Both the position numbers and the translations under genes were made by a program. Source: Camelus dromedarius (lineage: Eukaryota). Taken from it: a DNA stretch of 64,000 nt. The stretch is taken from contig NC_087438.1 of the NCBI RefSeq assembly GCF_036321535.1, positions 1,984,001 to 2,048,000 on the forward strand. The letters run 5' to 3'. Position 1 is the stretch's first letter; each line of letters starts with the position of its first letter. The notes beneath the pieces were generated by a model that saw only the letters and a list, made by a program, of their open reading frames with translations, was not told the origin of the DNA and did no database searches. This document shows, in pieces, positions 14,022 through 55,846 of this stretch.

Positions 14022-14800
14022 TATTATAACAGAAGTATAGTTGAAGCTGTGTTAGTTTCTGGAGTACAGCATAGTGTTCAGTTATACACATATATATATA
14101 TATTCCTTTTCATATTTTCATGTTCTTTTTCATTATAAGTTATTACCTGATGCAGAATATAGTTCCCTGTGCTCTACTGTATAAACTTATTGTTTGCCTA
14201 TTTTATATATAGCAGTTAATATCTGCAAATCTCAAACCCCCAACTTATCCCTTCCTACCTCCTTCCCCCGCTGGTAACCATAAGTTTGTTTTCTGTGTCA
14301 GAGTCTGTTTCTGTTTTGTAAATAAGTTAATTTGTCTAATTTTTTTTTTTAGACTCCACATAGGAGTGATTTCATATGGTATTTTTATTTCTCTTTCTCT
14401 CTTACTTCACTGAGANNNNNNNNNNNNNNNNNNNNNNNNNNNNNNNNNNNNNNNNNNNNNNNNNNNNNNNNNNNNNNNNNNNNNNNNNNNNNNNNNNNNN
14501 NNNNNNNNNNNNNNNNNNNNNNNNNNNNNNNNNNNNNNNNNNNNNNNNNNNNNNNNNNNNNNNNNNNNNNNNNNNNNNCTGTGGATATTGGGGTGCATGT
14601 ATCTTTTCAGATTAGTTCCCTCCAGATACATGCCCAAGAGTGGGACTGCTGGATCATAGGGTAAGTCTATTTTTTGTTTTTTGAGGACTTGTCATACTGT
14701 TTTCCATAATGACTGCACCAAACTTCATTCCCTCCAGCAGTGTAGGAGGGTTCCCTTTTCTCTGCACCCTCTCTAGCACTTACTGTTTGTGGACTTTTAT
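14022..14800 (-). mobile_element. Artiodactyl/camelid L1 3' end (ORF2 C-terminus plus 3'UTR), interrupted by an N block
   Basis: GAATATAGTTCCCTGTGCTCTACTGTA, CTGGTAACCATAAGTTTGTTTTC and GGGGTGCATGTATCTTTTCAG; minus frame ..GMYLEGTNLKRYMHPNIH.. lies in the ORF2 C-terminal region. Confidence 0.95.
14416..14578. other. N block, 163 bp, inside L1
   Basis: Run of N counted from sequence. Confidence 0.99.
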
Positions 14801-15390: not shown

Positions 15391-15587
15391 GACACACACC
15401 GCTATACATAAAATAGAAAAACAACGAGGTCCTGCTGTAAAGCACAGGGAACTGTATTCAACATCTCGTAATAGCCTAGAATGAAAAAGAACATGAAAAA
15501 TGGTGTATGTATGTATGTGTATGATTGAAGCATTGTGCTGCACACCAGAAACTGACACATTATAAACTGACTGTACTTCAATAAAAA
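15391..15587 (+). mobile_element. 5'-truncated L1 3'UTR tail
   Basis: TATACATAAAATAGAAAAACAACGAGGTCCTGCTGTAAAGCACAGGGAACTGTATTCAA...CTGTACTTCAATAAAAA. Confidence 0.9.
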
Positions 15588-17954: not shown

Positions 17955-18045
17955 CTTTTTATCGATTTATTGGAGGTGCTGGGGATTGGACCCAGGACTC
18001 TGTGAGCGCTAAACGTGCACTCTACCCCTGAGCTACACCCTCCCC
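17955..18045 (-). mobile_element. tRNA-Ala-derived camelid SINE (Vic-1-like)
   Basis: Minus GGGGAGGGTGTAGCTCAGGGGTAGAGTGCACGTTTAGCGCTCACAGAGTCCTGGGTCCAATCCCCAGCACCTCCAATAAAT. Confidence 0.9.
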
Positions 18046-35475: not shown

Positions 35476-36250
35476 CTATGCTGTTGCGAAGCAGGTAAGT
35501 GAAGGGCGTCCTGATTTAATTAGAAACTCTCTTAACCAGCACCTTTCCCTCCAAGGGCAGGCGCAGTGTCCCTGCCTTGGTCCCACTGGCGAGGAAGACT
35601 TCTCTACACTGGCTGGCAAGGCACCGCAGCCGCCACGTCGGAGGGGGGTGTCAGCTTTTAATTGTAACTGTCTTGCAGAGCGGTGTTGTTTTAATATCCT
35701 GTATAGATTTTTATGTAATACACTCACTTGCAGGCAGCCTGAAGCAAGAATCAATTCTGTGAAGGGTTCTTCTTTTGTTANNNNNNNNNNNNNNNNNNNN
35801 NNNNNNNNNNNNNNNNNNNNNNNNNNNNNNNNNNNNNNNNNNNNNNNNNNNNNNNNNNNNNNNNNNNNNNNNNNNNNNNNNNNNNNNNNNNNNNNNNNNN
35901 NNNNNNNNNNNNNNNNNNNNNNNNNNNNNNNNNNNNNNNNNNNNNNNNNNNNNNNNNNNNNNNNNNNNNNNNNNNNNNNNNNNNNNNNNNNNNNNNNNNN
36001 NNNNNNNNNNNNNNNNAGCAGAATACATTAATTAGATGGACTGGGATCATTAGACAGAAACTATCTCATTGGTCCCTTGTATCAAATTTGTATACAATCT
36101 CTATCAAGATATTGCTTTATTTGTGTGGCTAAAAACCGCTGCTGAATCAGAAAGTAGATGGCTACGTCTGCTTCCTTTTTATTGTCCATCACCAACTATT
36201 CTTCCACAAATAACAAATCGTAGATATTTTTGCTTAAAATTGATTGTTTT
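35476..36250. promoter_or_regulatory. Candidate conserved non-coding element; core hidden by N block 35781-36016 (236 bp)
   Basis: Non-repetitive, TAAT-rich flanks (GATTTAATTAG, CATTAATTAGATGG); conservation inferred, not computed. Confidence 0.5.
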
Positions 36251-38039
36251 GGGATGACTCATCATGTGTGGAATTTAGCAAAAAGCATTTCAGGCGCACT
36301 GAAGCCCCTCGGAGGCCCAGCGCACGGCGACCTGTGGTCAGGAGGGCAGGCTGCGGCCCTGACGTGGTCGCGTCCCCAGCGCCTGCGAGCCCAGAAACAC
36401 GCAGGACCCGGTGCTCTTCCACAACAGACCTTGCGATCTTTGCTGCCTTTGTGTTAGCGCTGTCGATGGCACTGTCGGGAGGGAGGACTCGCAGACACCC
36501 TTCCGGGGGAAATTATTGATTTCTGCCCATTCGAGATTCACCGCTGGCTTAACCTGGCTAAGCAGAACCCCCATCAGACCGCTCCCTCCTCCCCTTAGAA
36601 GAGACGGCCTTGAAAGTCAGGCGGTGTCCTTGTTGCTGGAGATCCTGCCCCCAAATTTCACGGGTGGCGAAGAGCCGTGGCCGTCTGCTGAGATGACGTT
36701 GGGAAGCTGAGAATGAGCCACGTGCACTGAGGCCTCAGGAGCCGGGCGTTCCTCCTGCCTTTTGTCCTGGGGGGATGCCCGCCGGGACTCGACTTCTTTA
36801 CCTCTTGGAGAGTCGCCTTTGGCACTTTCGTAGACGCAGTCCTTCCTTCCGCTCCCCCGCGCCCCCCGATCTGTACCATTAGCACCCTACCAAATAATAC
36901 ACCGCTAAGCACAGTCAGAAGGCTTCTGCCTTCCCACTGCATCGTGGTGTGTCCACAATAAGCTGCGGAACAGGACGGAATCAGGGCGTCCATTAATAAG
37001 AGGGTGGTGTTTGTTTCCAAAGACCTTCCTACTTCACTTGCATCTTTCTGGCTTTCAAATTCCTCCTCTTTACACGACCTTTTCACTGAATCCTGGGGGC
37101 CCAGAGATGCCATTTTGAGTTGTCCGTCTGCCGTACACAGTTTCAAGTTTACCAGTGAAATAGTCGCACTTAATAAAAAGTGACCTTGTTTTACAGACAA
37201 ACATGATGAATTTATGGGGGCAGCTGAGTGGAGCTATTCATTCCCAGCCTAGTGCCATTTTAATTAATTAAAATAAAAAAATCAATGAAGGTAGATTCGG
37301 TTTTCTACAAGCTGTTTTACATTTTCTACTTTCCTATTTGAAATTCAAAGGGTTTTTAAAGAAATATTTTATTTTTTTGGTTGCTCATAGTATCTTTTCT
37401 CCCCTTTGTCTGTCTTAAAATGTATTTCTCCAGGGGCACTTGGGGTCCAAAAGGCAGCCGATTGTTCTTCGTGCAGACAGGCTCTGAATCCTGTAGTGTC
37501 TTGATTTGAATAAAGCGAGGAGTGATGGGGCTAATGTGATGGCATCTTGAATTGCTAAGTGGCTCGAGGCTGAAAGCCCAGCGTGGCCGCTCAGGGGCAC
37601 AGGAGTCGCGCACAGAGAAAAGCAGAAGGAGACGGGGAGGAGTCCAGGCACAGACCCTGGACACTCCCCGGCGACGGGCAGGAGAGGGGAGGTCGGCGTG
37701 GGGTCCCGCCGCGCGGCCGTCCACGCAGGGCTCCGGCTGGGACTCCGCCTTGCACAGCCCTCCTTAGCACCCAATTAACTGACTTGGGTTTGGGCAGATT
37801 CCTTCTTTCTGAGAGAGGCTACGGCAGACTGCAGCTTTAATTTCAGAAAATGCTCAACGCAGATTAAAATTAGAAACCTGGAATTACTGTTTTATCATCC
37901 TTGATCAAACACGGAATCCAGAGAAAGAAAGCTTGCGTGGTGGGCACGAACATCGGGAGCTGGATTTTGCATTATTATCTCCTGCCTAACTAGGCACTTT
38001 CCGGGGCACCCGAGCTCTTCGCCTTTTAACTGAGCTTGC

Positions 38040-38760
38040 AGTTGCTATAGTGATGGTATAATTTCGTAATGGTCTAGAAATGACACCGGCATAGATACTG
38101 ACAGATAGGAATTAATTCACTAACAAGTAATTATGTCGCGAAATGTTGACTGCCATCCAGAAGTTGCGCGGTGACACATTTTCTGTTTTTCTGGGATGGC
38201 AGTAACATTAGCATTGGTCATTAGTGGTAGACNNNNNNNNNNNNNNNNNNNNNNNNNNNNNNNNNNNNNNNNNNNNNNNNNNNNNNNNNNNNNNNNNNNN
38301 NNNNNNNNNNNNNNNNNNNNNNNNNNNNNNNNNNNNNNNNNNNNNNNNNNNNNNNNNNNNNNNNNNNNNNNNNNNNNNNNNNNNNNNNNNNNNNNNNNNN
38401 NNNNNNNNNNNNNNNNNNNNNNNNNNNNNNNNNNNNNNNNNNNNNNNNNNNNNNNNNNNNATAAGATGACTCAGAATTTGCATTGTTCATTCTAATAAAT
38501 TTGCTTCCCCTCCATTGCATGGCAGGACCCATCAGATAAAGTCTCCCGGACTGTCATCAANNNNNNNNNNNNNNNNNNNNNNNNNNNNNNNNNNNNNNNN
38601 NNNNNNNNNNNNNNNNNNNNNNNNNNNNNNNNNNNNNNNNNNNNNNNNNNNNNNNNNNNNNNNNNNNNNNNNNNNNNNNNNNNNNNNNNNNNNNNNNNNN
38701 NNNNNNNNGAAGTGTCATTAATGCTGTCTAACTAGAGGAGCCTCAGCTGGGAGAGTGAGC
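38040..38760. promoter_or_regulatory. Candidate conserved non-coding element; N blocks 38233-38460 (228 bp) and 38561-38708 (148 bp)
   Basis: Flanks rich in TAATT/ATTA and TGACA motifs (GGAATTAATTCACTAACAAGTAATTATG, GTGTCATTAATGC); no repeat similarity. Confidence 0.55.
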
Positions 38761-41649
38761 GCCTCTGAAAAAGTAATCACGGCGAGGTGCGGGAGACGGG
38801 AACCAGCGCCCCGACGCCGCGCGAGTCCTATTAGCAAACAGTTGTATTTCTCATCTGCGGTTCTTCACGATAAAATATGGGAGCGCAGACCTCAGAACAC
38901 GTACGTGGGGTTGATACAATTTCTGTCACACACTCACCGGTGGGTCCTAAGCCAGTCCTGCTTAACCTGTTACTACCGGGGCACCTAATATGTAATTTGC
39001 AGATTTCAAGCTCATCTCACCGTTGGAGCCACATGGTGCAAAATTCAGCTGGTACGCAAAGGTGACCGGTGCTGCACTCACCCAGCCAAGTGGTGGATTG
39101 AAGACGTGGACTTAAGACTGTCATTCTGCCCTTAGAGCCCTCTGCTAATAAGATCACGTTGCCATTAATCATCACTTGGCAACCAAAACCCTCAAACAAA
39201 AAATATGCGTAAAAAGATGCAAGCAGGATGCGAACCATGCAGGCAGCCTTCCGCGCAGGAACGGTTCGCTAGGCAGTTGCCGAGCCCACGCCCAGGACGC
39301 TAAGCAGAGCTTTTGTTAATCTGAGCGGCGGGGTAGGAGGCCATCGCGCTATGTTGCAGCTAAATCGGAGAGGAACAGATGCATGGGGGAGAAAGGACAA
39401 TTTTATCACATGACAGGCAGTTTCATTTGGAAATGGATGCGCCCGGGTTTTAGCTGTGCCCCAATGCCCGGGTCGCGAGCCGACTGGTGTGTTGGGCAAT
39501 GGCACTTTGGCGGTGGCCTCGCTGCGTCATCGTGGTGTGCAGGATGCTGCGTCTGTGCAGAAAGTGCCCCCAGCAGATTCCACATCATAGGCACCGGCTC
39601 TTTCCCATCTTGTTGTCAAAATAATACACTCACGTGAGGTCTATCTTCACTTAATTACTGACATCATTTCGTGTCTGTAGAACAAGTAAATTATTGTTCG
39701 GCCACTCAAGAAAGAGTAATGAAGACGGCATTCTGTAGTTTCACAGTTCACAACTTGTCACAGGTATGGCTGAGCTAATTGTCAAGCGGTTAAACATTTA
39801 TCCAGGGAGGATGATCAGGCAAGCACCCTGCGTGTGAGGGAAGCCCAGCCCAGCGCACACAAGCTTCAGCAAGCGTGAAAAGTTTGATTTGCCGCTCTGG
39901 AGATCAGACTTCACGAAGGCAGAGATGTTATTTTATCTTTCAAAAGCCAATGCACGAATGAAACAAGGCTGGAAGCCGGTGGAAGCTGCAGACATTTGAG
40001 GACCACTCATTCCTGATGTCCCGAGTCTTGAGAAAGATGAAAACGCAACGACAACCACTTTGAAAAGGCGGACTTTCAAAGCTTTTTCTAATTTAATCTT
40101 TGTCCCTAAAATTTATCCATGGAAGGTACTCTTATTAATTTTCCTGAGGGAACCCCTTCATGTGGACGGCGTGGGGACACTTTCATTCCTTCTCCCTTAA
40201 GGAAGAGCTCTGCTGGGCTTTCAAAGACTCAGCTAGTGTGGGGCAGATTTTGAAAATTCTAGCAATTAACTGCACAGAAGAACAACATTTTTTTTCTAAT
40301 ATCCTGGGATCGTCCTTCAGGTCGTTACAGGTGGAACCGTCCTTAATGAATGCCAAGGGGACAGCTTAAAAAGCCTTTTTGTCAGTTCCAGTACCCCGGT
40401 CCGGGAGGGTGGGGATAGAGCAAACGCTGGAGACGTTCTAACAGTCACCTTCTTGGGGACCAGCTGGAGAGCAATTGGAGGGAAAACCCTCTCATTAATC
40501 ACTGAGAGGAGGTGAAAAATTAAGATGTCGATTTTGCACCGTCCGCGTTTCCCCTGGACCTCTCCACTCACCAGAGCAGACAGAGACTGGGCTCTCCAAA
40601 AACGCACGCAGGTCACAGGCGGGAAGCGCCACCCTGCCCCGTGCACTTTGCGAAGTTGCTGTAACTTGCGGGAGGTTTCAGAGGCTCACACTTAGCTCCT
40701 GCTGCAGGCGTGCTCACTCACGGGGAGCTGGGGAGCCTGCCCCCCGTTATTCAGGATATCCTGCTAACGCCGCCAGCAGCCAGCTTCTGTCCAGATTCAC
40801 CCCTGGATGGAGTGTACAGGCAAACACAGCCCCTCCTAGGTACCCTTGGTAATTGCTGCAAGTCAGAAAGTCTTGCTCGAGTGTGAAGAGGAAACTCTGA
40901 TCTCGTCCCCCGTGCCACCACCTGGGACTGGCGAGGGGACCAGGCGGAGACGGGGAGGCCCAGGCCGCACTGCCATGCTCTCCCGAGGAGGCCCGGGCGT
41001 GTCGCCCGCTGGGGACACAGGTTGTCCACCTAGGCAGCCACTGGGGATGCCGCAGGCAGCGGGCAGTGGAGCGCCTGCCCGGAGACCTTCGCCGCCTTTC
41101 CCCCAGCTACTGCCTGCTGGATGCAAACAGCTGTTTCAGGCACTTCCAAGAAGACAAATGTCTTTTCAGGGGCTTTTGAGAAAATAAATCGCCATCATTT
41201 GGATAAGGCACATTTTATTAGTGACAAAAACCCATGGGTGAATTTGTTTTCTGTTTCATTAGATGCAATGTAGCCATTCAGCCGGTCACATGTAAAGTTT
41301 GAAAATAGGATTTCTAGCCCTCTGTGTTTACCTACATACGAATTTGCCGTTTCACTCCCACGTCTCAAACGAGCTTCTCCGGGGTGTTAGAAGGATCAAT
41401 TACTCCTTCCTTTAGGGAGACGGCACAGCCTTTTCTTTTTCTGGCAGAAGAGAAAAAGGCTAGAAAATTGGTCAAGATCATTTGCTGCTTCAGAGGCAGC
41501 AAAAACCAGCATCTTTCTCTCGAGTGAAGGTATTTTGAACGTGCACAAAGCAGGATTCTTGCAGGCAGAGCCTGCAGAACCATCAGGACGCGAGAAGGAA
41601 GCCCAGATGCTCCTGGTCCCCAGATTTGCAGGTTCCGGGACGTAGTGTA

Positions 41650-42960
41650 TATTTTATGAAATGATTAATGCGGACAAGGAGCTCACATTTTTTACATTAA
41701 CNNNNNNNNNNNNNNNNNNNNNNNNNNNNNNNNNNNNNNNNNNNNNNNNNNNNNNNNNNNNNNNNNNNNNNNNNNNNNNNNNNNNNNNNNNNNNNNNNNN
41801 NNNNNNNNNNNNNNNNNNNNNNNNNNNNNNNNNNNNNNNNNNNNNNNNNNNNNNNNNNNNNNNNNNNNNNNNNNNNNNNNNNNNNNNNNNNNNNNNNNNN
41901 NNNNNNNNNNNNNNNNNNNNNNNNNNNNNNNNNNNNNNNNNNNNNNNNNNNNNNNNNNNNNNNNNNNNNNNNNNNNNNNNNNNNNNNNNNNNNNNNNNNN
42001 NNNNNNNNNNNNNNNNNNNNNNNNNNNNNNNNNNNNNNNNNTTTTTTTTAAACTCCATATTCATGAAAAGCGGACTTGTAATTTGATAAAGGGGAGCTTG
42101 TGTTCCCGTTTCCATTCAAACGGCATCGCGGAGCAGAATTAAAGTAGGCATCTGTGTTCTCCGGCATTAATCTCCTCAAGCACATCCCAGCTGCTCTGAT
42201 GTGCAGGAGGAAGATAAGTCCTGCGCNNNNNNNNNNNNNNNNNNNNNNNNNNNNNNNNNNNNNNNNNNNNNNNNNNNNNNNNNNNNNNNNNNNNNNNNNN
42301 NNNNNNNNNNNNNNNNNNNNNNNNNNNNNNNNNNNNNNNNNNNNNNNNNNNNNNNNNNNNNNNNNNNNNNNNNNNNNNNNNNNNNNNNNNNNNNNNNNNN
42401 NNNNNNNNNNNNNNNNNNNNNNNNNNNNNNNNNNNNNNNNNNNNNNGGAGCAGCCATCACCATTTGAATTGAGGTATTCAGTAGCACATGAATATGAACA
42501 AATGGCAAACATAAATCTCTTGCATGAAGTACACCTTCTATCCTTTTATTATGGAACAATTNNNNNNNNNNNNNNNNNNNNNNNNNNNNNNNNNNNNNNN
42601 NNNNNNNNNNNNNNNNNNNNNNNNNNNNNNNNNNNNNNNNNNNNNNNNNNNNNNNNNNNNNNNNNNNNNNNNNNNNNNNNNNNNNNNNNNNNNNNNNNNN
42701 NNNNNNNNNNNNNNNNNNNNNNNNNNNNNNNNNNNNNNNNNNNNNNNNNNNNNNNNNNNNNNNNNNNNNNNNNNNNNNNNNNNNNNNNNNNNNNNNNNNN
42801 NNNNNNNNNNNNNNNNNNNNNNNNNNNNNNNNNNNNNNNNNNNNNNNNNNNNNNNNNNNNNNNNNNNNNNNNNNNNNNNNNNNNNNNNNNNNNCATGTTT
42901 GTGTTTATTGAAATAGATTTAATGGTATTATGAGTGATGATACACTTAACCAAGGCTATA
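41650..42960. promoter_or_regulatory. Candidate long conserved non-coding element; N blocks 41702-42041 (340 bp), 42227-42446 (220 bp), 42562-42893 (332 bp)
   Basis: Unique AT-rich islands between the gaps with homeodomain motifs (GATTAATGC, GTAATTTGATAA, GCATTAATC). Confidence 0.55.
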
Positions 42961-45497
42961 TTTATAAATTCCTGTCAAACTTTTATTTTCTTCCCTCTGC
43001 TTGAGCTTAGAGAATTGATCTGAGGTTGTGCTGTCTCTCCTGTGTGTCCGCCACGGGCAGAGCCACGGACAGTGCGCACAGGGGCTTTGTTATTTACGCA
43101 TTGTCTACTGGGCCAGGGTAGCCCGGACCCACCCACCCAGGCCCCTGATATTCTTAAAACAAAAAATAAACAAACAGAAAATAAAAGCTTAACTTCACTG
43201 GATGCATCAGCCTGGGCGGTAGTTTCCACTGAGGACCTGTATTCTGCAACGACCAAAGTGTTTACTCTGCTCCTTCTCCAAAATGGCCTCGACGTTGCCA
43301 ACAACCACAACACCAGAAGCAACAATGACCGGAGGGGGAGGAGCTCCTCCGCACCTTTCTGGTGCCACCTTGCAACTTCCCATCGCATCTCTGCCAGCGC
43401 CCACCGCGCTGGGATCCTGCAGCTGGCCGCACGGGGCCACACGTGGACACATCAGAGGGGCAAGCAGAAGGTGGACACCCCCAGGCTTATCACGGAGGAT
43501 GTGAAGCAACTCGGAATCTTTTCTGAGGCTGGAAAGTCAAGTCCAACTCTAGAAAGAAAATTGTTCTTCGCAGACGAAGAGAGAAAATGCTTTCTGAAGG
43601 GTTGGGTGCTGTGAGTACCTAGGAGAGAAGACAAAAACTGTAAAAAGTTAGAAGAACAAGCCCATCACTTTATCCTCAAGATTGGCAGGCTGTAGACTGG
43701 TCACTCATTACCCCACTTTTCTCTGTCCCCCTAATATTGAAAGTCGTACAGTTCGAGTGTCGACAACACACTCCGGGTCATTACCTGATACAAGCACGTG
43801 CCACTCGTTTCAGGCTCATAAAAGAGAGACTGTTTGCACCTTCCATAAAGTCTACCAGAACGGTTTGAGCATAATAGGTGTTCAGTTAACCCTGTATAAT
43901 GAACAGGCAGATAAACACGGCCCTGAGTGTCTTCATTTCTAGAGGGGTGTAGAGGGACAGTCACTCGTGTGCCCCAGAGCTTGCTGAGGTTAATTTTTTT
44001 ATGCTCCAATGTGTAATTCCTGGTTTTCCAGGATTAGGGTGGCTGAGACAGTGATGAGAAGAAACCAAACACACAAGGGAAAGATCCCTGATCTCAGAGC
44101 AAACTACCAGAAATACATTTCCTTATTAACTTGCTCTGAATCTGTTTATTTGCCAGAATTATTTTCAGTTACCTCTTTGTTATCCACCCCCACACACAAA
44201 AAAATCCAGTGTTTTGTGTGGATGGAGAAATGTTGCAGTTATTAGCACAATCTCTGCCGTTTTTTCTAATCACTGCTATGTATATGGTCTGCAAGAATGG
44301 AGGGAGGTGGGGCCTGGTAAATCCTCTTCTAATAAGAAAAATGTCTGACTTCGTGAAACCAGATACTTAGTTCTGAGCCCCGAAACAAGCTGAAAGCATA
44401 GACTCTTAGGGAATACTGTTTAAAAATCACAGGTAGATTAAAATCACACGCACAGCCTTGCATATTGGGATTTTAATGTTCATTATTGCATTCATTATAT
44501 GATTTAAATGAGATTACAGAGTAAAATATGCTGTACTTTGTGATTTAACAACAATATTTAAATACTCTGTAAGTCTTTTAAATTATTCTTTGATAAAATT
44601 GCAACTTACTCATTTCAACACACAGTCTGTATTGAGTCTTAAAGCTATATAAAGCTTCTGTAAATGTATGGTTTTGCTTTAAGCACATCTTGACGCAAAA
44701 GGGATTCAAAACCTTTTGACTGGATTGAAAATGATGTAGGTGGCGGGGCTGAGAAAAGCCACTGGTGGCGACCAAATTAAGTGAGCTCGCCCTCCGGGGT
44801 TTTCCTGACAGACTGGCCCCACCGGGCAGGTCCCAGGGGAGACATTCACAGACATCTCAAAGGTACCTAGAATTTCTACTCTGAAAGAGCAACCTTTTTC
44901 TCTCTGTGTCTGGGGCCTACGTAAAGCTGCCCTTGAATGTCAGGAGATGTGCCCGGTATACTTTCTTGGAATAAAAATAATTGACTTTTTTTTTTTTTTA
45001 ACCAAACTCAATATTTGAAAGCATTTGATGCCACAGTAGCCCAGTTTCTTGTTTACTTTCCCTCTAAAACACACTTTTTCCCTCTATGTGCTGCTCATCC
45101 CTGGACAGATGAAATTGATTTCAATTTATCCTAGCAATTTTTTACGACTCTACTGAAATTCCGTCATCGCGCCGGCATTGGAAGAAAGAGGGTTCGAAGG
45201 TTAAGACCGTCGGCGCAATCTCTGTGTTAGCATGTTTCCAGGATAATTATTGGACTCCTTCTATGTACAGACCCGTTCAGCGTTGGGCTGGCTGACGATG
45301 GATTTGATTGTGACCACTGGGCAACATTTATTAGGAGTTCCTAGTGTTTGTAAACAATCCAAATATAAGATCTTTCACTTCAAATGGCTCACTTTTTTCC
45401 CTCCAGGGTCACAGTAGATAGAGGGGTAGAAAGGGGAAGAGAAGAGAGAGGGGATACACTTAAACATAAGAAAGGAAATTAAGGAAACACTTAAGCA

Positions 45498-45623
45498 GGG
45501 GAGGGTGTAGCTCAGTGGCGGAGAGCGCACTTAGCATGCACGACGTCCTGGGTTCAATCCCAGGTACCGCCACTAAGAAATAAACATAATTACCTCTCCT
45601 CCCCCCCCCAAAAGAAATAAAAA
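45498..45623 (+). mobile_element. tRNA-Ala-derived camelid SINE (Vic-1-like) with intact Pol III boxes
   Basis: Box A TAGCTCAGTGG 45508-45518, AGC anticodon loop TTAGCAT, box B GGTTCAATCC 45551-45560, then TAATTACCTC-C-rich-A-rich tail. Confidence 0.95.
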
Positions 45624-48600
45624 GAGCAAGAAAGAACACACGTACAGAGGCAAGCACGCTGAGCTTACGTGCGTTAAGAAGGCACTTAAACACGAGGAAG
45701 GAGAGGCAGTTTGTTCAGATCGGTTTTGATGCCTGTTTTCATTCGATTCTGGAATTCTAGTTTTTATTTGATTTCGAAGTTGGTGAGCGTTGTTCCTTCT
45801 AAGTCTAAGGACTTCTCACCTTACAGAAAATTTGAAAGTCAAAATGGGAAACAGAAAAACCACCAGTAGAATCGGAGACAGTGGAGGAAAAGCACAGTTC
45901 TCAGAAGGAGTGGCCCGCGTGTGCGGCCGTGCCCGCAGCTCTGCGCCCCCCACAGGCCCCCGGCACACCTCGCCCTCGAGCCCTCGGCTCCGTGCCCAGA
46001 CCCCCGGACGCCAAGCCCAGTTTCCGTTCTCCCGCTGTCTCCTGCAAACTTCCAGCCGGCACTGGGCCCGTGATGCCACCTCGGGGACTCAGGTGGCCCT
46101 CAGCTCCTGCTCCCCCGACCGCACCTGCGTCTCTGAACAGCCCCTCGTCCGTTCTGCTCCGGGTGAGCCCTCCTGTTGTCGCTCCCCAGGCACTGACACA
46201 GATCGCACTCTTAAAATAGCATTTACTGTCCTGTTCACTGCTGGAGGAATAAGCTGCTCTCTGCAGACAGTAATAAAACAAGGAGAAGGAAGCAAAGGAA
46301 ATGAAAACCACCCGTAGTCCCCAAGTCAGAAGCAAGCCGGCTGGCGTTCACACGCACGCACGTGTACTGAGGACAACCACACGCGTGCACTGCTCCATAT
46401 GCGTGTACTATGACGTGCTGTGATGCAGACACACATGACACACACGGTTCCATTAGCACGTGCATGTGTGCGGGCGTGTCCGCATGGCTTTAGTTCTGGA
46501 TGGGGGAGGAAGCGTCCCTTGTCCTGATCTGTATCTCACGTAGCACCAGGCACAGTGACGTGTGCTCATGGTGTCCTCTCCACAGATAGCTGTTGAGTAA
46601 ATGAAAAAAAAAAGCAGATTTTAAATTTTCCTTTGTTTTTTTTTTTCCTCACGCAGTGACTTTGCAAGTGTCTGAAAATAAAAAGTGCGGTCACTTGGTG
46701 CGCGCGATGCCGAGTGACTGATCTGAGTAGTGTTCCCAGGGAACGTACCCACCTGCTGACTGAGCGCACTGGCTTCCCTTTGCAAGCTCCCCTGCGGCTG
46801 CGTGAGCCCGTGTGCAGGCCCGGGAAGGACGGAGCCCCCTCCGTCTGCGTCCGGAACGGAAGGTTTCATTCCTTCCGCTGCTCATCACAGGCGAAACTGC
46901 TCCCATGGTTTTAAATACGATGCCACGACTGCAAACAACGGTGTGGAAGATGGTATTTGGTTAATTTTCTAACCAGCCCTTGACCCCATCAGTAGCTGTT
47001 CTCTCGGTACCCAGATGAGTACAGCAGGGTGCGCCGGCCTTTAAAACGTGCGCACCCAGAGTCGCCAGGCCCCCGTACAGGCTCCTGCTGAATGTGTTTT
47101 CAGTACTCAAAATGAAGGAAGACTCGCCTTAGCAAAATTGTCACTGGCACAGCCGTCACGTGAGTGTCCCTTCTGGTTTTACCGGCGGGCGCCGTGGCCG
47201 GTGCAACTCACCGCAGAAATCGGGCTTGGGGCTGTGGGAGGCGGGGCGGCCTGGCCTTGTCCGTGCCAGGGTCCTCCTCCCGCGGGGGGAGAGGGTGCGG
47301 GGCCCTGCTTCCGTTACTGTTTTAGGTACTGATGAGATGTTAGAAACAGGGCTGAAATAATTGGATGTGACCTTTTTGGTTTTCTCCACCCGGGAGCAAA
47401 CTTGGAGGGAACCTGGGAGGGTGACTGATGTGGGCGGCTGCTCCCGGACAGCTCGGGCCTCGGGCAAGCGGCTGCCTTCCTAAAATAAGAGTGCACTTTC
47501 TGCTCATTAGGAAGGAAATTCAGCTGCACACTGCGCCTAGCTGCGCCTCCAGACCACCCTCACTGCACTCCACACCCCGCCCCGTCGGGTCCCCAGAGTG
47601 AGCGCTTTGCTGTAAGGTGAAAAAGCAGAAGTCTCGACTCGTATGTGACTTTGAGCTGCTAGGCAGTGCCGTTTCCTTCAGTCGCAGAAAAATTTCACGT
47701 AGACGTAAGAAGGAGGAGAATTTTTAAAGTTGGTTTAGTTTAGTCACATCATTCCAAGAGCAGTCTCTTTCCCATTGCTTGGGGGGGGGGCATCAAGTGT
47801 GACTTTGCTTCACTTCCAGCAGGACAGACTTCGACCCAAACCTGTCTATTTAGAGGGGACTCAGAGCCGAGGGAGGAGCAGAGCCTTTTCCAGAAATAAC
47901 GGTGGATTTATGCTGATGCTGGTAATTCTTGATCAGAGCTTTTCTGCAGTGAAAGCCGGGTTACTAATGGGCTGAAAATACACTTTATTAAGTTTCACTG
48001 AAAATGGCAGAAGGGAGCAGAGTCTGGGAGGAGAACCCGGCCTGGGCCGTCGCCGGTCCTGGTGGCTCTGGGCTTTCTTCTCAAGGCTGTGGGGCTGCCG
48101 GGGACCTTCCACCGTCCCATCCTCCTCTGCCCTCGTTCCCAGAGGCAAGCAGCAAGGGGAGCCGGCTCAGCGGACTCCACGGCCCGGGGGAAGCCTTCCT
48201 GGAGGCCCAGTGTTACCACGATTCATTCCCAGAAACTCCTGAGGCATGGCAGGCGTGAGAACATGGTATTAAACGTGGAAACTTTCATTTCATCTCATTA
48301 AGGGGGGCATGGACTGAATACAGATGATGAAAGTGAAACACAGCAAAAATGGCTGCTCCAGGTCGTCCGATTCACCCAGCTCCACGTGGGCTGCGTCCAT
48401 CACAAGGGCACGCATTGGAGGAAACGCCTTTCAGAAGTTACCTGCCATAGTGGCTGGTTTAAAGGACCCTGTGGAAACGCAGGAGCCGGCTTCCAGGGGA
48501 CACGGCTGTCACTACCTGCCCTCAGGGGACCTGACTGCCACCGACTTCGCAGTGCTGGTGCCAGCTCTAAGCTGGCAATTTACGTTTCCAAACAGCTGCA

Positions 48601-48643
48601 GTGCTCAACTCTGCGGTCCTGCAAATAGATTTGCTTTCTCTAA

Positions 48644-48791
48644 ACAGGGTAATCATTCAGTATCTTGTAATAACCTGTAATGGAAAAGACTCTGAAAAAA
48701 AATATACGTATGTGCATGTATATGTAGAACTGAATCACTTTGCTGTGCACCTGAAACTAATGCAGTGTTGCAAACCAACTGGACTTCAGTT
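48644..48791 (+). mobile_element. 5'-truncated L1 3'UTR tail (older artiodactyl type)
   Basis: CAGTATCTTGTAATAACCTGTAATGGAAAAGACTCTGAAAAA...ACTGAATCACTTTGCTGTGCACCTGAAACTAA. Confidence 0.85.
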
Positions 48792-48795
48792 GGGA

Positions 48796-48935
48796 GGGGA
48801 GAGCGGAGCTCAGCGGAGGAGCGCGTGCTGAGCTCGCACGAGGTCCTGGGCTCAATGACAAGTCCCTTCACTAGAAAACAAACAGATGAGCCTAAACTTA
48901 AACCTAATTACCTCCCCCCTAAAAATACAAAAAAA
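48796..48935 (+). mobile_element. tRNA-Ala-derived camelid SINE (Vic-1-like), diverged
   Basis: GGGGAGAGCGGAGCTCAGCGGAGGAGCGCGTGCTGAGCTCGCACGAGGTCCTGGGCTCAAT...AACCTAATTACCTCCCCCCTAAAAA. Confidence 0.85.
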
Positions 48936-50556
48936 GGATAATAATTTTAAAAAGTAAAGATTGAATTTAAAAAATATTCCAATTTTTTAAAAAGCATGAT
49001 CAAATAAAAGTAGTAAAATTGACATTTAAAGTCAATGCGCATGTGAAGCCACACCTGCAGATGAGAGTGTGTGTCCCTGCCCCAGACCTGCAGCCCGGGT
49101 GCCTGGGGGGCGTCCTGATCGCCAGGCTTTTCCCCACAGGCTGGGTGGTCGCTAAGGCTGTCGCTGTTGCCTTCGGGGCTCCCCCGGCTCTGGTCCCAGG
49201 TGCTGGCGGGGGTCCCAGGGCTCGGCCCGGGTGGATGCAGGATGGTGGGGCTGGACCAGGAGGCTCGCCCTGTGGACCCGCACAGTGCCCTCTGCCGGGC
49301 CTTCTGCCGGGGCGGCCTCCTGTCTCCGCACCAGTGTCCTGTCAGGCTTCACTGGAAACCGAAGATCAAAGCTCACTTACACTATGAGCGAACAGGTCTC
49401 TCAAGTCCAGGAGCCTCTGTTTATTATTTCAAGAAAACGGAGCTAATTTCTTGAAAGCCAGGCGGCCAGGCGCCGCCTCCCTTCCCGGGATGAGCCATGC
49501 GGTTTTGTGCGACAGGCCGGCGCTTGTCCTTTGGAAACCGGAGTGTTGAGGGTGTAGCCACACTGATGTCTTTGTAAAGGTGATACATGCGGTCTGTCTG
49601 TCAGACAAATACCCCAACAAGTACAGTGTTTATCAAATTACCTTTAAACGCGCAGGTCGGAGGGCCCTCGCAGCCAGACGTGGGAAGGCTTGCTTTGCCT
49701 CATTCACACAGAAATCGCTTAATGATAGTTAATATCGCCCTGTAATCTCAGCAGCTCCCATTTAATTGCAACTTTTTGAAGTCTGTCTGCACCCATGGAG
49801 GACGGCGGATCCCTGTCTTAAGCACGATTCAGGTGGTCCTGGCTCCCAGGGAGGCAGGGACAGCGGAGCTCGGTCACCTGCGGGAGCGCTCCAGTCCATC
49901 CTGGTCCGGGGCCCTGACCACTCTCCCCAGCGCTGGGGACACCGCACCTTGGGGAAGTCCTGGAAAGGGGCATGGGGCTACTGCACCCCCAGAAAGGACT
50001 TTTCTTTTTAAACCAAAATCTCAGCTTTCAAAAAAAAAAAAAAACACCAAATTCAGCACGGGCTTGCTTGGAAATGCCAGTGCAATGCTCTGAACACCTC
50101 CAGGCCCTGCCCTGTGGGAGGGCCAGCTGTAAGGCGAGCGCTGGCTGGCCTGTCCCGGGGGGTTCAGACGTTTCCTGGGAGGCAGCAAGCCCTTCTCCCC
50201 GCGCTGACCTCACCTCTGTCCCTAGGACGGGGGGGCCGGGGCCACACCCCGACTCACCCAGACTGGGTGTCCCTCCTGGGCTGCGGACATCAACACGTGA
50301 ACAGAAACTCCTGATTTAAGCATTTTTTCAGCACGTCTTCTCTATTTGATGACACAGAAGCAGACTTAATGGCACGTAATTATTCAAAATACATGGATAA
50401 GGGTTGAACTGAACTTTTCCAACCAAACCCATAAAACCACCTACTGATTAAGACTCACCTTTACAGCTGAGCCTTTCTCTAAATTTCATAGATTGATTTC
50501 ATATTCATTCTTCCATGTGATTCAAATACTCTGCAATGTGGGTCTATGAACATCTG

Positions 50557-50770
50557 TTGGGGTTAGCAGACACACACTACTGTATATAAAATAGATAAGA
50601 GCACAGGGAACTGTATTCAGTTTCTTATAATAACATATCATGGAAAAGAACCTGAAAAGAAAAAGCATCTATGTATGTATATGTATAACTGTATCACTTT
50701 GCTGTACGCCTGAGACTAACGTTGTAAATCAACTGCACTTCAATAAAAGATAAAATTAAAAAAGAAAGAA
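50557..50770 (+). mobile_element. 5'-truncated L1 3'UTR tail (older artiodactyl type)
   Basis: GGGGTTAGCAGACACACACTACTGTATATAAAATAGATAA...GCACAGGGAACTGTATTCAG...CACTTCAATAAAA. Confidence 0.9.
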
Positions 50771-52554
50771 TACTGAAGTATTTGGGTAATGCTGGCGGCC
50801 ATTTGGCCTGTGAGAGCCGTTGGATACTGTGGACCAGAAACCGGCAGACACAGTTTTAAGCACAGACGTGAAGGCATGATGTCTGGGCTTATGACAGAAG
50901 CCTTAATGTGTTGAATATTTTACTTGCTTTTTGAAGCAAAACAATATGTAATTTTTTAAAGTGTCAACATAGGTTTTCTCAGAAGACACATGGCTTAGGG
51001 GTTCCACTGGTTTGGGATATACCTTAATTAAAATTATTTATATGAGCTCTGTAATTTCCTTTTTTTGGTCTTTTGTTTACTTCTCTTCGGCGTCACAGGT
51101 GAATCCTTTCTCTTGACCCCTCAGCTGGATGTAGGGAGCCACTCACACACGCCGAGTGACACTGATTCTCATTCACACGCATTGGGCCTTTCTCTTGTGC
51201 AGCCTGCCTTTAGGAGGGGCGGGATCCACCTTTTTGTTCTGCTGAGCTAGAAAGCCACGTGGGACAGAACAGGAGGGCCTGGTGGGCCGTTTTAACTCTT
51301 GATCGTCAGGCCTGGAGGCCGCCTCCTTCCCCCAGGCATCCTCCGCATCGGATGGGAGGAAGCGTGAGCGTCTCTGGCTGTACCGTGTCGCCATCTCTCA
51401 TTCCTCCACTTCTTATCACAAAATCGACACCATGCCCAGCTGGAGTATCACACCCCCGAATTCTCGGTTGCTCCAGGTAGGCGAACGGTCACCTTGCAGT
51501 CATCTCAAAGGAGGAACACACACACGAACTGATTAAGTAAGCCAGTGTCTACTGCACACGAGCAGGGCCTGCAGAGGAGGAGCGGGTGTACCTGTGAAGC
51601 CTCCCGGGGTGGAGTGGGGTGTTAATTACACCCCTGCTACTGGCTGATCTGTGTCTTGTTGCCTTTTGTCTTGGAGATAACTGCCTGGACTTCAAAGGAT
51701 GCTTTAAATTTGAATCTCTGCTCCATGGCAAAAGCCAGTGTGAAAAGGCTGGGATTACAGTAAAAGTTCTGCAGTTAAATGCCTGAGCTCGTTTTCGCAC
51801 AAACTTCACAACAGTCAATGCCATACATAAACCTCTCAGCATTTTCAAGACAAACCTCTTTTAGAGCTTAGCCTGGGAAACCCACACACGTTACTTAAAG
51901 ACGAGCACACCCTGGTCTTCATTCCCGCACCCTAAAAGCCTCAAGAGGCCTCGGTTTCCCTGATCCTGTCGAGGTGTTGCTTCTGAAAGACAAAGTCGGG
52001 TAGACTGGAGTCCGCGGTGCACGTGGAGCTCCGCGGTTACTGACTGCGTTCCGTCCAGGTGCACACACCGGCCCACACCCTCCCGAATCAGGTGGGGGTG
52101 TTTACCAACTTCTGCACAGTTTTTTAGCCTCTCTGGGTGGTACGTGGCAACGAGATGGAAGCGGGTGATGAAGGTGCTGGTGACTCCTGTATTAGCACAA
52201 ACTGTCCCGTCAGACACAACCTGCTGTGTCCTGTCACCGCTTACCGGCCGCAGCACCCCAGTGCGCCTGCTGCCCCTGCGAGCAGCTTTGTGCGTTCAGA
52301 GGACCAGTTCCTATTTTTTCACGGTGAGGATGCTAATTCCACCCTCCCCCCTCCCCATGTCCATTCCTCTCTGACACCCACCTTCACAGTCACTTCCTAA
52401 GACAGTCCCTTTGCCGATGTCGCTAGCAGGACCCCGTCTCTTGCACAGCCTCACGTCACAGCAGGCCCCGCGGGTATTTTGTAGATTAACCAGCACCTGC
52501 TTTTCCTGACACAAGGTCTTTAGAACTGTATTTATGTTTTGTTTTCCTGTGCCA

Positions 52555-52577
52555 TGTGTGCGTGTGTGTGTGTGTGC
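52555..52577. repeat. (TG)n microsatellite
   Basis: Direct reading. Confidence 0.9.
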
Positions 52578-52929
52578 ACATGCATCGCCAAGGCGACCAC
52601 CCTGACGTTCCTAAGGGCTTTTGTTAAATGCTTGTTACGGTGTCCACTTGGTTTCCTTAAGGAGGAAGCTAAAGAATTCCTTGTTCTTAAGCATGATTTC
52701 CTCGCACTTACTTTCTTGAGGAATCGCGGGGAGCCGGGGGGGCTGGGAGGGAAGCGTTCGCGTCCCGCTCGGCCATTGTCCTTCTGGAGAGCCGTCCTGC
52801 CGCCACTCCGATCACTCACGATTCTCCCCGACGCGTCGCGCCTCCCCAGGCTGGCTCTCCCTCCCGTCCAGCTGCACAAAGGGCTGCTCCCCGGCCGGGG
52901 CTCCGAGACGGCCGCTCTCAGCTGCTCCT

Positions 52930-53860
52930 GTCCCCAGTAATTAGCCTGTGATGGCCGCGGCCTCTTGTGGCTTTGCCTGCGAGAGACATTTGACACAGCA
53001 GACATCAGAGGGGTTTTCAGGAGGCTCTTGTGGCGTCCGAATGGCTCTTAATTAACCGCTTAGGTCTCCTCCTTCAGTCCCCTGCTTGGCACTTTCCAAA
53101 TGGTAGGGGTTTCACCGTGGATCTAAACTCCGGGGGAAGCGTGCTATCAAAAGATGTTGTAAATGAAGGCTTGTGTAAATTATTTTTAATGATCCCCTCC
53201 TGGCACATCATTATGTTTGTAGCTACACACAGGCACTTCAGAGAGGGCTCTCCTTCCGCGAGGTCAGCTCCAGGACCACCGCGACTGGCTGCAGTCAGGA
53301 AATGGCTTATTAATTAGCGCCGTGATTTTACACCGCTAAGAGCTCTGATGTATGGAGCTGGAATTGCAATTGTGTAGACTCAAAATAATAAGCCATCTCC
53401 GGGCTCCTTATGCAAATTGGCATATTATAAAATCATTACCTATCTAAACACCGAGTTTTANNNNNNNNNNNNNNNNNNNNNNNNNNNNNNNNNNNNNNNN
53501 NNNNNNNNNNNNNNNNNNNNNNNNNNNNNNNNNNNNNNNNNNNNNNNNNNNNNNNNNNNNNNNNNNNNNNNNNNNNNNNNNNNNNNNNNNNNCTATTCCG
53601 TGCTTCTGGTTCAAATCAGGTTATTCTCTTTGGTCACAGGAAATAGGCCTTCTTAGCAATAGGTATGTGACATTATGGAACGCTTGTACAGAGAGATGTT
53701 TAACCATCACTTTTTTATGAGTATGATTTTGATTACAATAGAGCGTCAACCATGAGACAAGAAATGCTAAGTGGCATTGGAAGTGGCTTCTATTATATGA
53801 GTGACACGGCAAAGAAGTAAAATCAGGGAAAAACATTACATCTTTATAAAAGCTCATGGA
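52930..53860. promoter_or_regulatory. Candidate conserved non-coding element; N block 53461-53592 (132 bp)
   Basis: TAATTA sites near 52937, 53048 and 53311; octamer ATGCAAAT 53410-53417; no repeat similarity. Confidence 0.5.
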
Positions 53861-55846
53861 TTTGGGGTGGGGATTGAATTTTTAAATAATTATGGTTTTA
53901 GAAGCAAAACATTTTCTAAAACCTATGCGATGCAATTTAATTCTAATACATTGATTTAAAATCGCCCATATAATGATTTATGTATGATGTCATACAATAA
54001 GTGGCAGTCATTCTTGTCTCTAAAGCCAACCCTATCAGGCAAGAGAGGAAAAGGTTTCCTTTTATTTGATGTGGAGCAAACCGGTGCGCGAGCGATCACT
54101 CTCCCACGTGAAGTACCGCCCACAGAAACGGCTGCACGCCTGCCACGATCCCCATGCGTGATCTGAAGAGAATTATGGTGCCGCTTTCTTGACGAGGGGT
54201 ACAGTGGGAGCGTGGAAGGACTGTTTTCTGCCTTTATGACGTTGAATTGAGCGCACAGAGACCTGGCGTGTGCCCTAATATTAGGCGGCGTGAGCTGGTG
54301 AAAGAATGACTGGGTTTAAAACATTAAGTGAAGCAGTTTTTAGAAAAGCAGCGTTACATCTTTGGGGGAACGAAGGACATGCAAGCGGATCGTGATGATT
54401 TGATGAGTTCGTTGCAGAATAAGTAGGACTATTGAAACAGCTGCTTTCCCGTTAATCCCCCGGGGACGCCGAAGGATCTGGGTGGGACTGAACTCCCCCA
54501 GTTCTGCCTCCAGCCACTGGAGCCAGACTGTGCAGGGTGACCTGGAACCCAGCCCAGGTGAGGCGGGGGGGGGGGCCTGGGGGCCCTTGGTGAGCGACGG
54601 CGACACCCACAGAGGACTCGGCGGGTGTCCAGAGCTGGGCCGGAGTGCCCCCCGCTGGAGTCCCGCTCAGCGCGGCTGGGGTTTCTCCACTGCTCCCCCG
54701 GACCCGGCCTCCCCCACCCCAGCCGCGGCGCTGCGTGTGGCAGGCCCATCCCCAGAGCCCTCCTCCGTGAACCGCCACGGCGCCTGCCCAAGTCGCCTGA
54801 TCGATAGCTAGTCTGCACGGTCACCAGCCCAGGTGCGTTTCCCAGCTCCTCCTCCAAACATGCATGTGCAGCAGGTGCAGGGACCCCAGACGCAGGCCCC
54901 TCACTCACCACGGCTCCACCCCCTCCACGCAGCCTGGACCAGGTGGTGCTCCCTTCCTGCAGGCTCGCTTCCTGCTCTTGGCAATTTGGCCCACAGTCAG
55001 GTTCTGGTGTTGGGGTCCCCGCCGTGTGCGCTTGCCGATCTGACTCTGCACACAGCTTCCTGGACATCCTCAGCCTGCACACCCAACCCCACCTGCCGTT
55101 TCCCGGCACTCCGACCTTCGACCTGGCCTTGCACCGGTTTCACTGAGCCACGGCGACCCTGTCTTCGTGGGTCTGAAATTCCGTACATTTACTTGTAACA
55201 AATCCTCAGCAAGAGGCAGACAGCCTTCCCCTGAGAGCTCTGCCCTACGTGTTCCAGAAGCTTCTGCTGCAGGCTGGGGTTCTATGCAGGGAGACCGAGC
55301 CACGTGTGGCCGACTTCCCCTCCCTGCTCCTGCTTCTTAGCCAGACGGCTTCTGAGCACTTGGCTGGCCCTGGTGCGGGGGACTCTCTGAGCTGCTCTTC
55401 CGCGCTCAGCCCTGGTTTACAGCGGGATGTCTGTGGACAGCCTGTTATGGGTCCAGAGCCAATGCTGGGGTGCAATGTCCTGAGAGGCATACGCCCCCTC
55501 TCCTCGGCTTCCCCAGTCTCTAGTGGTTAATTTTAGAAGAATAACTGCTTTTAAAACAAAATCGGTTAGATGTGTTCTGTGGAAGAAATGAAGTACTTGA
55601 CTAATTGTGGTGTAAGCCAAGCAGATGCCACTGTCAACAGAAGGATGGAGGCCAGGACACCCAGCCCTGTCCATCTCCACCTCCACCCGCCTCCATCTCC
55701 TCCTGCATCAGGATCACTCCCTGACGTTCTCAGCACCCAGCACTGTCCTCCTCCATCTCCTCCATCAGGACCGCCTCAACTCCTCATCCTCACCCCTGCA
55801 GCCGAGTGTGCGCAGTGCTGGTGGACTCTCGAGCCTGTGACCCACC

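What the first reader, a model, noticed from the sequence alone, without database searches (positions are those of the whole stretch)
35781..53592. Seven N blocks appear to punch out the cores of ultraconserved-like elements
Seen: gaps of 236, 228, 148, 340, 220, 332 and 132 bp, all non-round and clustered, leaving 100-185-bp islands between some of them. All sit in unique, TAAT-rich sequence rather than in repeats, where true gaps usually fall. Inference: a human/vertebrate contamination filter or similarity mask removed segments near-identical to other vertebrates. The gaps would then map a cluster of hidden highly conserved enhancers, and this assembly would falsely appear to have lost them.
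Basis: partly seen in the sequence, partly recalled or inferred. Interest (0 to 1): 0.72.

Follow-up and report, generated by a model that had tools for sequence, protein, structure and literature searches.

The report
Deliberate N masks over conserved elements
The seven runs of N are almost certainly deliberate masks that a filter laid over stretches of camel DNA closely matching human DNA, probably the cores of conserved regulatory elements, so they are a data-handling artefact and not gaps or losses in the genome.

Summary
Seven N runs sit at the stated coordinates (236, 228, 148, 340, 220, 332, 132 bp), with islands of 100, 185 and 115 bp between some of them.

New here: all seven lengths leave remainder 4 on division by 8, and the greatest common divisor (gcd) of their differences is 8. 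The chance of one shared class is about 4e-6. The block starts share no common grid. The window's eighth N run (163 bp) breaks the rule and sits beside interspersed repeats. So the seven were made by an algorithm, not by gap-size estimation. Repeats and microsatellites in the window are left unmasked, so this is not a repeat mask.

The flanks are unique, show no coding signal and no known RNA family, and carry twice the TAAT/ATTA density of GC-matched DNA (p=0.0005). AT content rises from 0.44 to 0.64 towards the block edges. That is the published signature of conserved non-coding elements.

"Ultraconserved enhancer cores" is plausible but untested, because the masked letters may not be looked up. 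Nothing shows that the public assembly lacks these elements. First readers made unchecked notes of the same kind of mask elsewhere in this genome. Ordinary; low interest.

The parts
35781..36016 (.). N block 1, 236 bp (4 mod 8). Deliberate mask.
   Evidence: Unique flanks. The right edge begins with a run rich in homeodomain sites (4 TAAT/ATTA in 50 bp).
38233..38460 (.). N block 2, 228 bp (4 mod 8). Deliberate mask.
   Evidence: Its start is exactly 8x41 bases before the start of block 3, so the two blocks share one grid.
38461..38560 (.). 100-bp unmasked island between blocks 2 and 3.
   Evidence: It contains an octamer-like ATTTGCAT overlapping a SOX-like CATTGTT (read by eye). No coding signal.
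38561..38708 (.). N block 3, 148 bp (4 mod 8). Deliberate mask.
41702..42041 (.). N block 4, 340 bp (4 mod 8). Deliberate mask.
   Evidence: Edge AT content is 0.70 and 0.74.
42042..42226 (.). 185-bp unmasked island between blocks 4 and 5.
   Evidence: Unique sequence with no coding signal.
42227..42446 (.). N block 5, 220 bp (4 mod 8). Deliberate mask.
42447..42561 (.). 115-bp unmasked island between blocks 5 and 6.
42562..42893 (.). N block 6, 332 bp (4 mod 8). Deliberate mask.
   Evidence: Blocks 4-6 make 892 of 1192 bases N.
53461..53592 (.). N block 7, 132 bp (4 mod 8), 10.6 kb from the others. Deliberate mask.
   Evidence: The left flank carries TTAATTA and an ATGCAAAT octamer (read by eye).

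Best explanation
The seven N runs are deliberate masks, not assembly gaps.

The lengths all have the form 8j+4, while the starts lie on no common grid of this genome. That pattern is expected if fixed-length words were taken from every eighth position of the reference and the hits were merged (inferred). Short, less similar pieces between hits survive as the 100-185-bp islands.

The surrounding DNA has no coding signal, is free of repeats and is not close to primates. Stretches of 132-340 bp that match human that densely must be under very strong constraint. They are most likely the cores of a cluster of conserved non-coding elements, of the kind that act as enhancers of developmental genes (inferred). 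Their AT-rich, TAAT-rich margins are still visible at the block edges.

Nothing is missing from the camel genome. The finding is an artefact of data preparation laid over ordinary, known biology.
For: Shown:
- Lengths 236, 228, 148, 340, 220, 332, 132 are all 4 mod 8, and the gcd of their differences is 8. P of one shared class is 3.8e-6.
- Starts mod 8 are 5,1,1,6,3,2,5, so there is no grid on this genome. Blocks 2 and 3 are exactly 8x41 apart.
- The 163-bp run (3 mod 8) has a left flank belonging to a repeat family and serves as an in-window contrast.
- Repeats, SINE-like tRNA hits and (AC)n are left unmasked, so this is not a repeat or low-complexity mask.
- Flanks of the seven are unique in the window.
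- TAAT/ATTA count is 38 against 19.2 +/- 4.7 for GC-matched windows (p=0.0005).
- AT content climbs 0.44 -> 0.53 -> 0.57 -> 0.60 -> 0.64 towards the edges. TAAT density is 2.3-2.9 per 100 bp within 50 bp of an edge, against 0.6-0.9 beyond 400 bp.
- Against random placement of the blocks, p=0.008 for edge AT and p=0.004 for edge TAAT.
- No coding signal and no Rfam family.

From the literature: conserved non-coding elements are AT-rich, enriched in TAATTA, show an AT drop just outside their borders, and lie in regions depleted of transposable elements (PMC5728398). They cluster near developmental genes (PMC3531063).

A published dromedary assembly has about one gap per 95 kb (PMC6618069), so about 0.19 gaps would be expected in 17.8 kb, against 7 seen. 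It is not known whether the window comes from that assembly.
Against: The masked letters were never seen, so their likeness to human, their identity level and their length are all inferred. The scan's program labels the runs as assembly gaps, though automatically. The word length, the merging rule and the reference used by the filter are guesses from seven numbers. No gene was found in the window, so the link to a developmental gene is not shown. The repeat check was only against the window itself.
Confidence: 0.82

Rival explanations
1. They are true assembly gaps, with sizes estimated by a scaffolder.
For: The scan's program labels them so. The window holds one run that looks like a real gap, 163 bp beside a repeat. 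Dromedary assemblies built from short reads do carry many gaps (PMC6618069).
Against: Estimated sizes would not all be 4 mod 8 (P about 4e-6). The flanks are unique, of moderate GC and not low-complexity. Seven gaps in 17.8 kb compares with about 0.19 expected at CamDro2's gap density. Islands of 100-185 bp would be oddly short contigs.
Confidence: 0.04
2. They are deliberate similarity masks, but at least one covers a conserved exon, UTR or small RNA gene rather than an enhancer.
For: First-reader notes elsewhere in this genome place N masks on exons and on a U1 snRNA copy (unchecked). Seven RNA or possibly-RNA runs hold 11-16% of the words of 38709-41701.
Against: No open frame with coding periodicity touches any block, and there are no Pfam hits. 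No Rfam family reaches into the flanks. The edges show no clear splice signals when read by eye.
Confidence: 0.1
3. The mask is already in the public assembly, put there by a contamination screen from the submitter or the archive. Anyone using that assembly would then miss these elements.
For: Screens for human contamination can hit ultraconserved sequence. The length rule shows an algorithm but not whose.
Against: The reads tool has its own filter, which tripped 77 bp from block 2 (the tool says this proves nothing). First readers report similar masks across many pieces of this genome.
Confidence: 0.06

Closest known systems
Hard-masking of sequence by a similarity or contamination filter (matched letters replaced by N)
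   Same: The run lengths obey an arithmetic rule (8j+4). The runs fall in unique sequence and are clustered, with short unmasked islands where similarity would be lower.
   Different: The filter, its reference, its word length and its merging rule are not documented to me. That each N stands for exactly one letter is inferred, not shown.
Ultraconserved elements (over 200 bp, 100% human-mouse-rat) and UCNEs of UCNEbase (over 200 bp, at least 95% human-chicken) clustered in genomic regulatory blocks
   Same: The setting has no coding signal and is repeat-poor. The margins are AT-rich and TAAT-rich with an AT dip outside. Several elements of 130-340 bp lie within a few kb. Five of the seven blocks exceed 200 bp.
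   Different: Identity to human, mouse, rat or chicken was not measured and may not be measured here. No target gene was identified. Two blocks (132, 148 bp) are below the 200-bp limit.
Scaffold gaps of short-read assemblies
   Same: Both are written as runs of N of non-round length.
   Different: Real gaps fall at repeats, as the 163-bp run at 14416 does, and have arbitrary sizes. The seven follow a length rule and lie in unique DNA.

Membership tests
Deliberate similarity mask | Lengths set by an algorithm rather than by measurement | tested here: met
   All seven are 4 mod 8 and the gcd of their differences is 8. The 163-bp run does not fit.
Deliberate similarity mask | N count equals the number of letters replaced (flanks continuous) | not testable with these tools
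Looking the letters up elsewhere is barred.
Deliberate similarity mask | Hidden letters match the reference (human) closely | not tested
   Inferred only from that note and from the nature of the flanks.
Deliberate similarity mask | Not a repeat or low-complexity mask | tested here: met
   Interspersed repeats, SINE-like tRNA hits, (AC)n and (TA)n in the window are left as letters.
Assembly gap | Falls at repeats, low complexity or extreme composition | tested here: not met
   Flanks of the seven are unique in the window, with GC 0.35-0.54 and no tandem repeats.
Assembly gap | Density in line with the assembly's gap count | tested here: inconclusive
   Seven in 17.8 kb against about 0.19 expected at CamDro2's density (PMC6618069). 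It is not known which assembly the window comes from.
Ultraconserved / UCNE element | Over 200 bp at 100% (human-mouse-rat) or at least 95% (human-chicken) identity (PMC3531063) | not tested
   The letters are masked and may not be looked up. Five blocks are over 200 bp and two are shorter.
Ultraconserved / UCNE element | Non-coding | tested here: inconclusive
   Flanks and islands show no coding signal and no Pfam or Rfam match. The hidden parts cannot be judged.
Ultraconserved / UCNE element | AT-rich, TAATTA-enriched, AT drop outside the border (PMC5728398) | tested here: met
   Tested on the visible margins only. AT is 0.64 at 1-25 bp from an edge, falling to 0.44 at 401-800 bp. TAAT/ATTA is enriched two- to four-fold.
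Ultraconserved / UCNE element | Clustered beside a developmental regulator gene | not testable with these tools
   No gene lies in the window, and no vertebrate genome collection is on offer.

The most novel reading that the evidence does not exclude
One or more of the blocks hide a conserved, unannotated transcribed element, such as a long non-coding RNA exon or an ultraconserved regulated exon, rather than an enhancer. The weak RNA word matches beside the blocks hint at this.
Probability: 0.08. Interest if true: 0.3.

Novelty: not a real feature. Interest (0 to 1): 0.08.

Why it matters
Mostly as a warning for the scan. In this genome, N runs whose length is 8j+4 are very likely filter masks of one N per letter, not gaps, so they should not be read as losses, breaks or unknown distances. 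Where they fall in DNA without coding signal or repeats, they mark strongly conserved elements. The 8j+4 rule gives later readers a quick way to tell masks from true gaps. The biology underneath, a cluster of conserved non-coding elements, is well known and not special to camels.

Tried and rejected
- Rfam at gathering and at E<=1 gave only two SINE-like tRNA hits far from the blocks, plus noise.
- The coding search found nothing: ORF list, codon-position scan, and Pfam on the ten longest ORFs. The locus could therefore not be named.
- A common masking grid on this genome was rejected, because the starts differ mod 8.
- A repeat mask was rejected, because repeats are left unmasked.
- I did not use the metagenome or genome collections to fish for orthologous copies. 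That would have recovered the masked letters by another route.

Full report
**What is there.** The window holds eight N runs. Seven are those of the finding:

| Block | Coordinates | Length (bp) |
|---|---|---|
| 1 | 35781-36016 | 236 |
| 2 | 38233-38460 | 228 |
| 3 | 38561-38708 | 148 |
| 4 | 41702-42041 | 340 |
| 5 | 42227-42446 | 220 |
| 6 | 42562-42893 | 332 |
| 7 | 53461-53592 | 132 |

Islands of 100, 185 and 115 bp lie between blocks 2/3, 4/5 and 5/6. Blocks 1-6 put 1504 N into 7.1 kb, and blocks 4-6 put 892 N into 1192 bases. The eighth run, 14416-14578 (163 bp), was not part of the finding.

**Mask or gap.** All seven lengths leave remainder 4 on division by 8, and the greatest common divisor of their differences is 8. 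Seven arbitrary lengths share one class mod 8 with probability 8^-6, about 4e-6. The 163-bp run is 3 mod 8.

The block starts are 5,1,1,6,3,2,5 mod 8, so the rule is not a tiling of this genome's coordinates. Only blocks 2 and 3 share a grid; their starts are 8x41 apart. Lengths quantised per block, with offsets that drift between blocks, are what one expects under a specific model. In it, fixed-length words are sampled at every eighth position of another sequence (the reference), matched exactly against this one, and merged. Small insertions or deletions in the less similar DNA between blocks then shift the grid. This mechanism is my inference from seven numbers. The word length (any value 4 mod 8) and the merging rule are unknown. 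The smallest surviving island is exactly 100 bp, which would fit a rule that bridges shorter holes, but that is a guess.

**Contrast inside the window.** The left flank of the 163-bp run belongs to an interspersed repeat family with copies near 15398, 30804, 48655 and 50598. The sequence on its two sides looks like a LINE-1 tail (recognised from memory, so only a lead). That is where real short-read gaps fall.

The seven blocks have no second copy of their 500-bp flanks in the window and no tandem repeats. Their flank GC is 0.35-0.54.

The repeats in the window are all left as letters: two tRNA-like SINE hits, and the (AC)n and (TA)n arrays. So the blocks are not a repeat or low-complexity mask.

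A published dromedary assembly ends with roughly 22,500 gaps in 2.15 Gb (my arithmetic from PMC6618069). That gives about 0.19 gaps per 17.8 kb, against seven here. I do not know that the window comes from that assembly, and gaps do cluster, so this is only supporting evidence. That the genome is a dromedary rests on earlier follow-up notes of this scan; the run look-up codes the organism.

**Continuity.** The program asked for this test first. The only tool that could show contigs running through the sites is read laying. The cap is one call. Whether each N stands for exactly one hidden letter is therefore not shown. It is inferred from the algorithmic lengths.

**What the masks cover.** The window shows no coding signal:
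- The long ORFs are the low-complexity kind seen in GC-rich DNA.
- A codon-position scan finds nothing convincing.
- Pfam finds nothing in the ten longest ORFs.
- Rfam finds nothing near the blocks, even at E<=1.

The flanks carry 38 TAAT/ATTA in 2000 bp, against 19.2 +/- 4.7 in GC-matched windows of the same 64 kb (p=0.0005). There is also a gradient with distance from the nearest block edge:

| Distance from edge (bp) | AT content | TAAT/ATTA per 100 bp |
|---|---|---|
| 401-800 | 0.44 | 0.56 |
| 101-400 | 0.53 | 1.3-1.6 |
| 51-100 | 0.57 | 1.6 |
| 26-50 | 0.60 | 2.86 |
| 1-25 | 0.64 | 2.29 |

Beyond 400 bp the TAAT/ATTA density stays at 0.6-0.9 per 100 bp. Blocks of the same sizes placed at random give edge AT of 0.504 +/- 0.047 against 0.623 observed (p=0.008). 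They give 5.6 +/- 3.4 edge TAAT/ATTA against 18 observed (p=0.004).

Conserved non-coding elements are described as AT-rich and enriched in TAATTA. They show a marked AT drop just outside their borders and lie in regions depleted of transposable elements (PMC5728398). They cluster near developmental regulator genes (PMC3531063). The visible margins fit that description.

If the masks mark dense exact-word matches to human, as the operators' note implies, then 132-340-bp matches in unique DNA with no coding signal in a camel cannot be neutral sequence. At about 80% neutral identity, a figure from general knowledge, even a 28-base exact run has a chance near 0.002. So "cores of strongly conserved non-coding elements" is the most likely content. 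It remains an inference. I cannot say whether they meet the 100% or 95% definitions, nor whether any is an exon or an RNA gene.

**Transcription.** Seven RNA or possibly-RNA runs hold 11-16% of the sampled words of 38709-41701. Without a further read-laying run, this cannot be told apart from DNA carry-over or intron reads.

Nothing shows that the public assembly lacks these stretches. First readers elsewhere in this genome noted the same kind of exact-looking masks on exons, a U1 snRNA copy and other conserved things. Those notes are unchecked and are not independent evidence. Two of them have spans of 164 and 180 letters, both 4 mod 8, but I do not know that these spans equal N-run lengths.

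**Verdict.** The mask reading is well supported. The "ultraconserved enhancer" reading is plausible and fits the margins but is untested. The "false loss" reading is unsupported. As biology this is ordinary, and as a genome feature the N blocks are not real. The useful product is a rule of thumb for telling masks from gaps in this data set.

Noticed in passing
window:14416-14578: The eighth N run (163 bp, 3 mod 8) has a left flank belonging to a repeat family with about five copies in the window. LINE-1-like sequence lies on both sides. It looks like a true assembly gap and serves as a contrast to the seven masks.
   Followed up: partly
The tool says the filter also trips by chance and proves nothing.
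   Followed up: no
It is far below threshold and is probably just the palindrome.
   Followed up: no
window:11341-11412 and 17971-18042 (minus strand): Two tRNA-like matches just above Rfam's tRNA threshold. The second has a 77%-identical 81-bp copy at 45496-45576. They are most likely tRNA-derived SINEs.
   Followed up: partly
window:28000-33000: A 5-kb block of very low GC (0.26-0.28) with almost no CpG, containing (TA)n and a T35 run. It contrasts sharply with its CpG-retaining surroundings. Its nature was not determined.
   Followed up: no
window:36000-40000, 45500-47500, 52000-54500: CpG observed/expected is 0.6-0.85 at only moderate GC, well above what is usual for bulk mammalian DNA (from general knowledge). 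This fits a broad unmethylated or constrained domain such as surrounds developmental genes.
   Followed up: partly
window:59370-61010 (minus strand): A 546-codon open frame in GC-rich DNA, overlapped by other long frames on both strands. It has no Pfam match and an arginine/glycine/proline-rich composition. It is probably non-coding, but it is longer than base composition alone would predict.
   Followed up: partly
window:53405-53425 and 38465-38485: POU octamer motifs (ATGCAAAT / ATTTGCAT) lie right beside blocks 7 and 2. The second overlaps a SOX-like CATTGTT. Two octamers in the flanks against 0.4 expected (p=0.07), so this is not significant.
   Followed up: partly
window:38709-41701: Seven RNA or possibly-RNA runs (metagenome-labelled or without an organism label) hold 11-16% of this stretch's sampled words. 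Part of the inter-block DNA may be transcribed.
   Followed up: no
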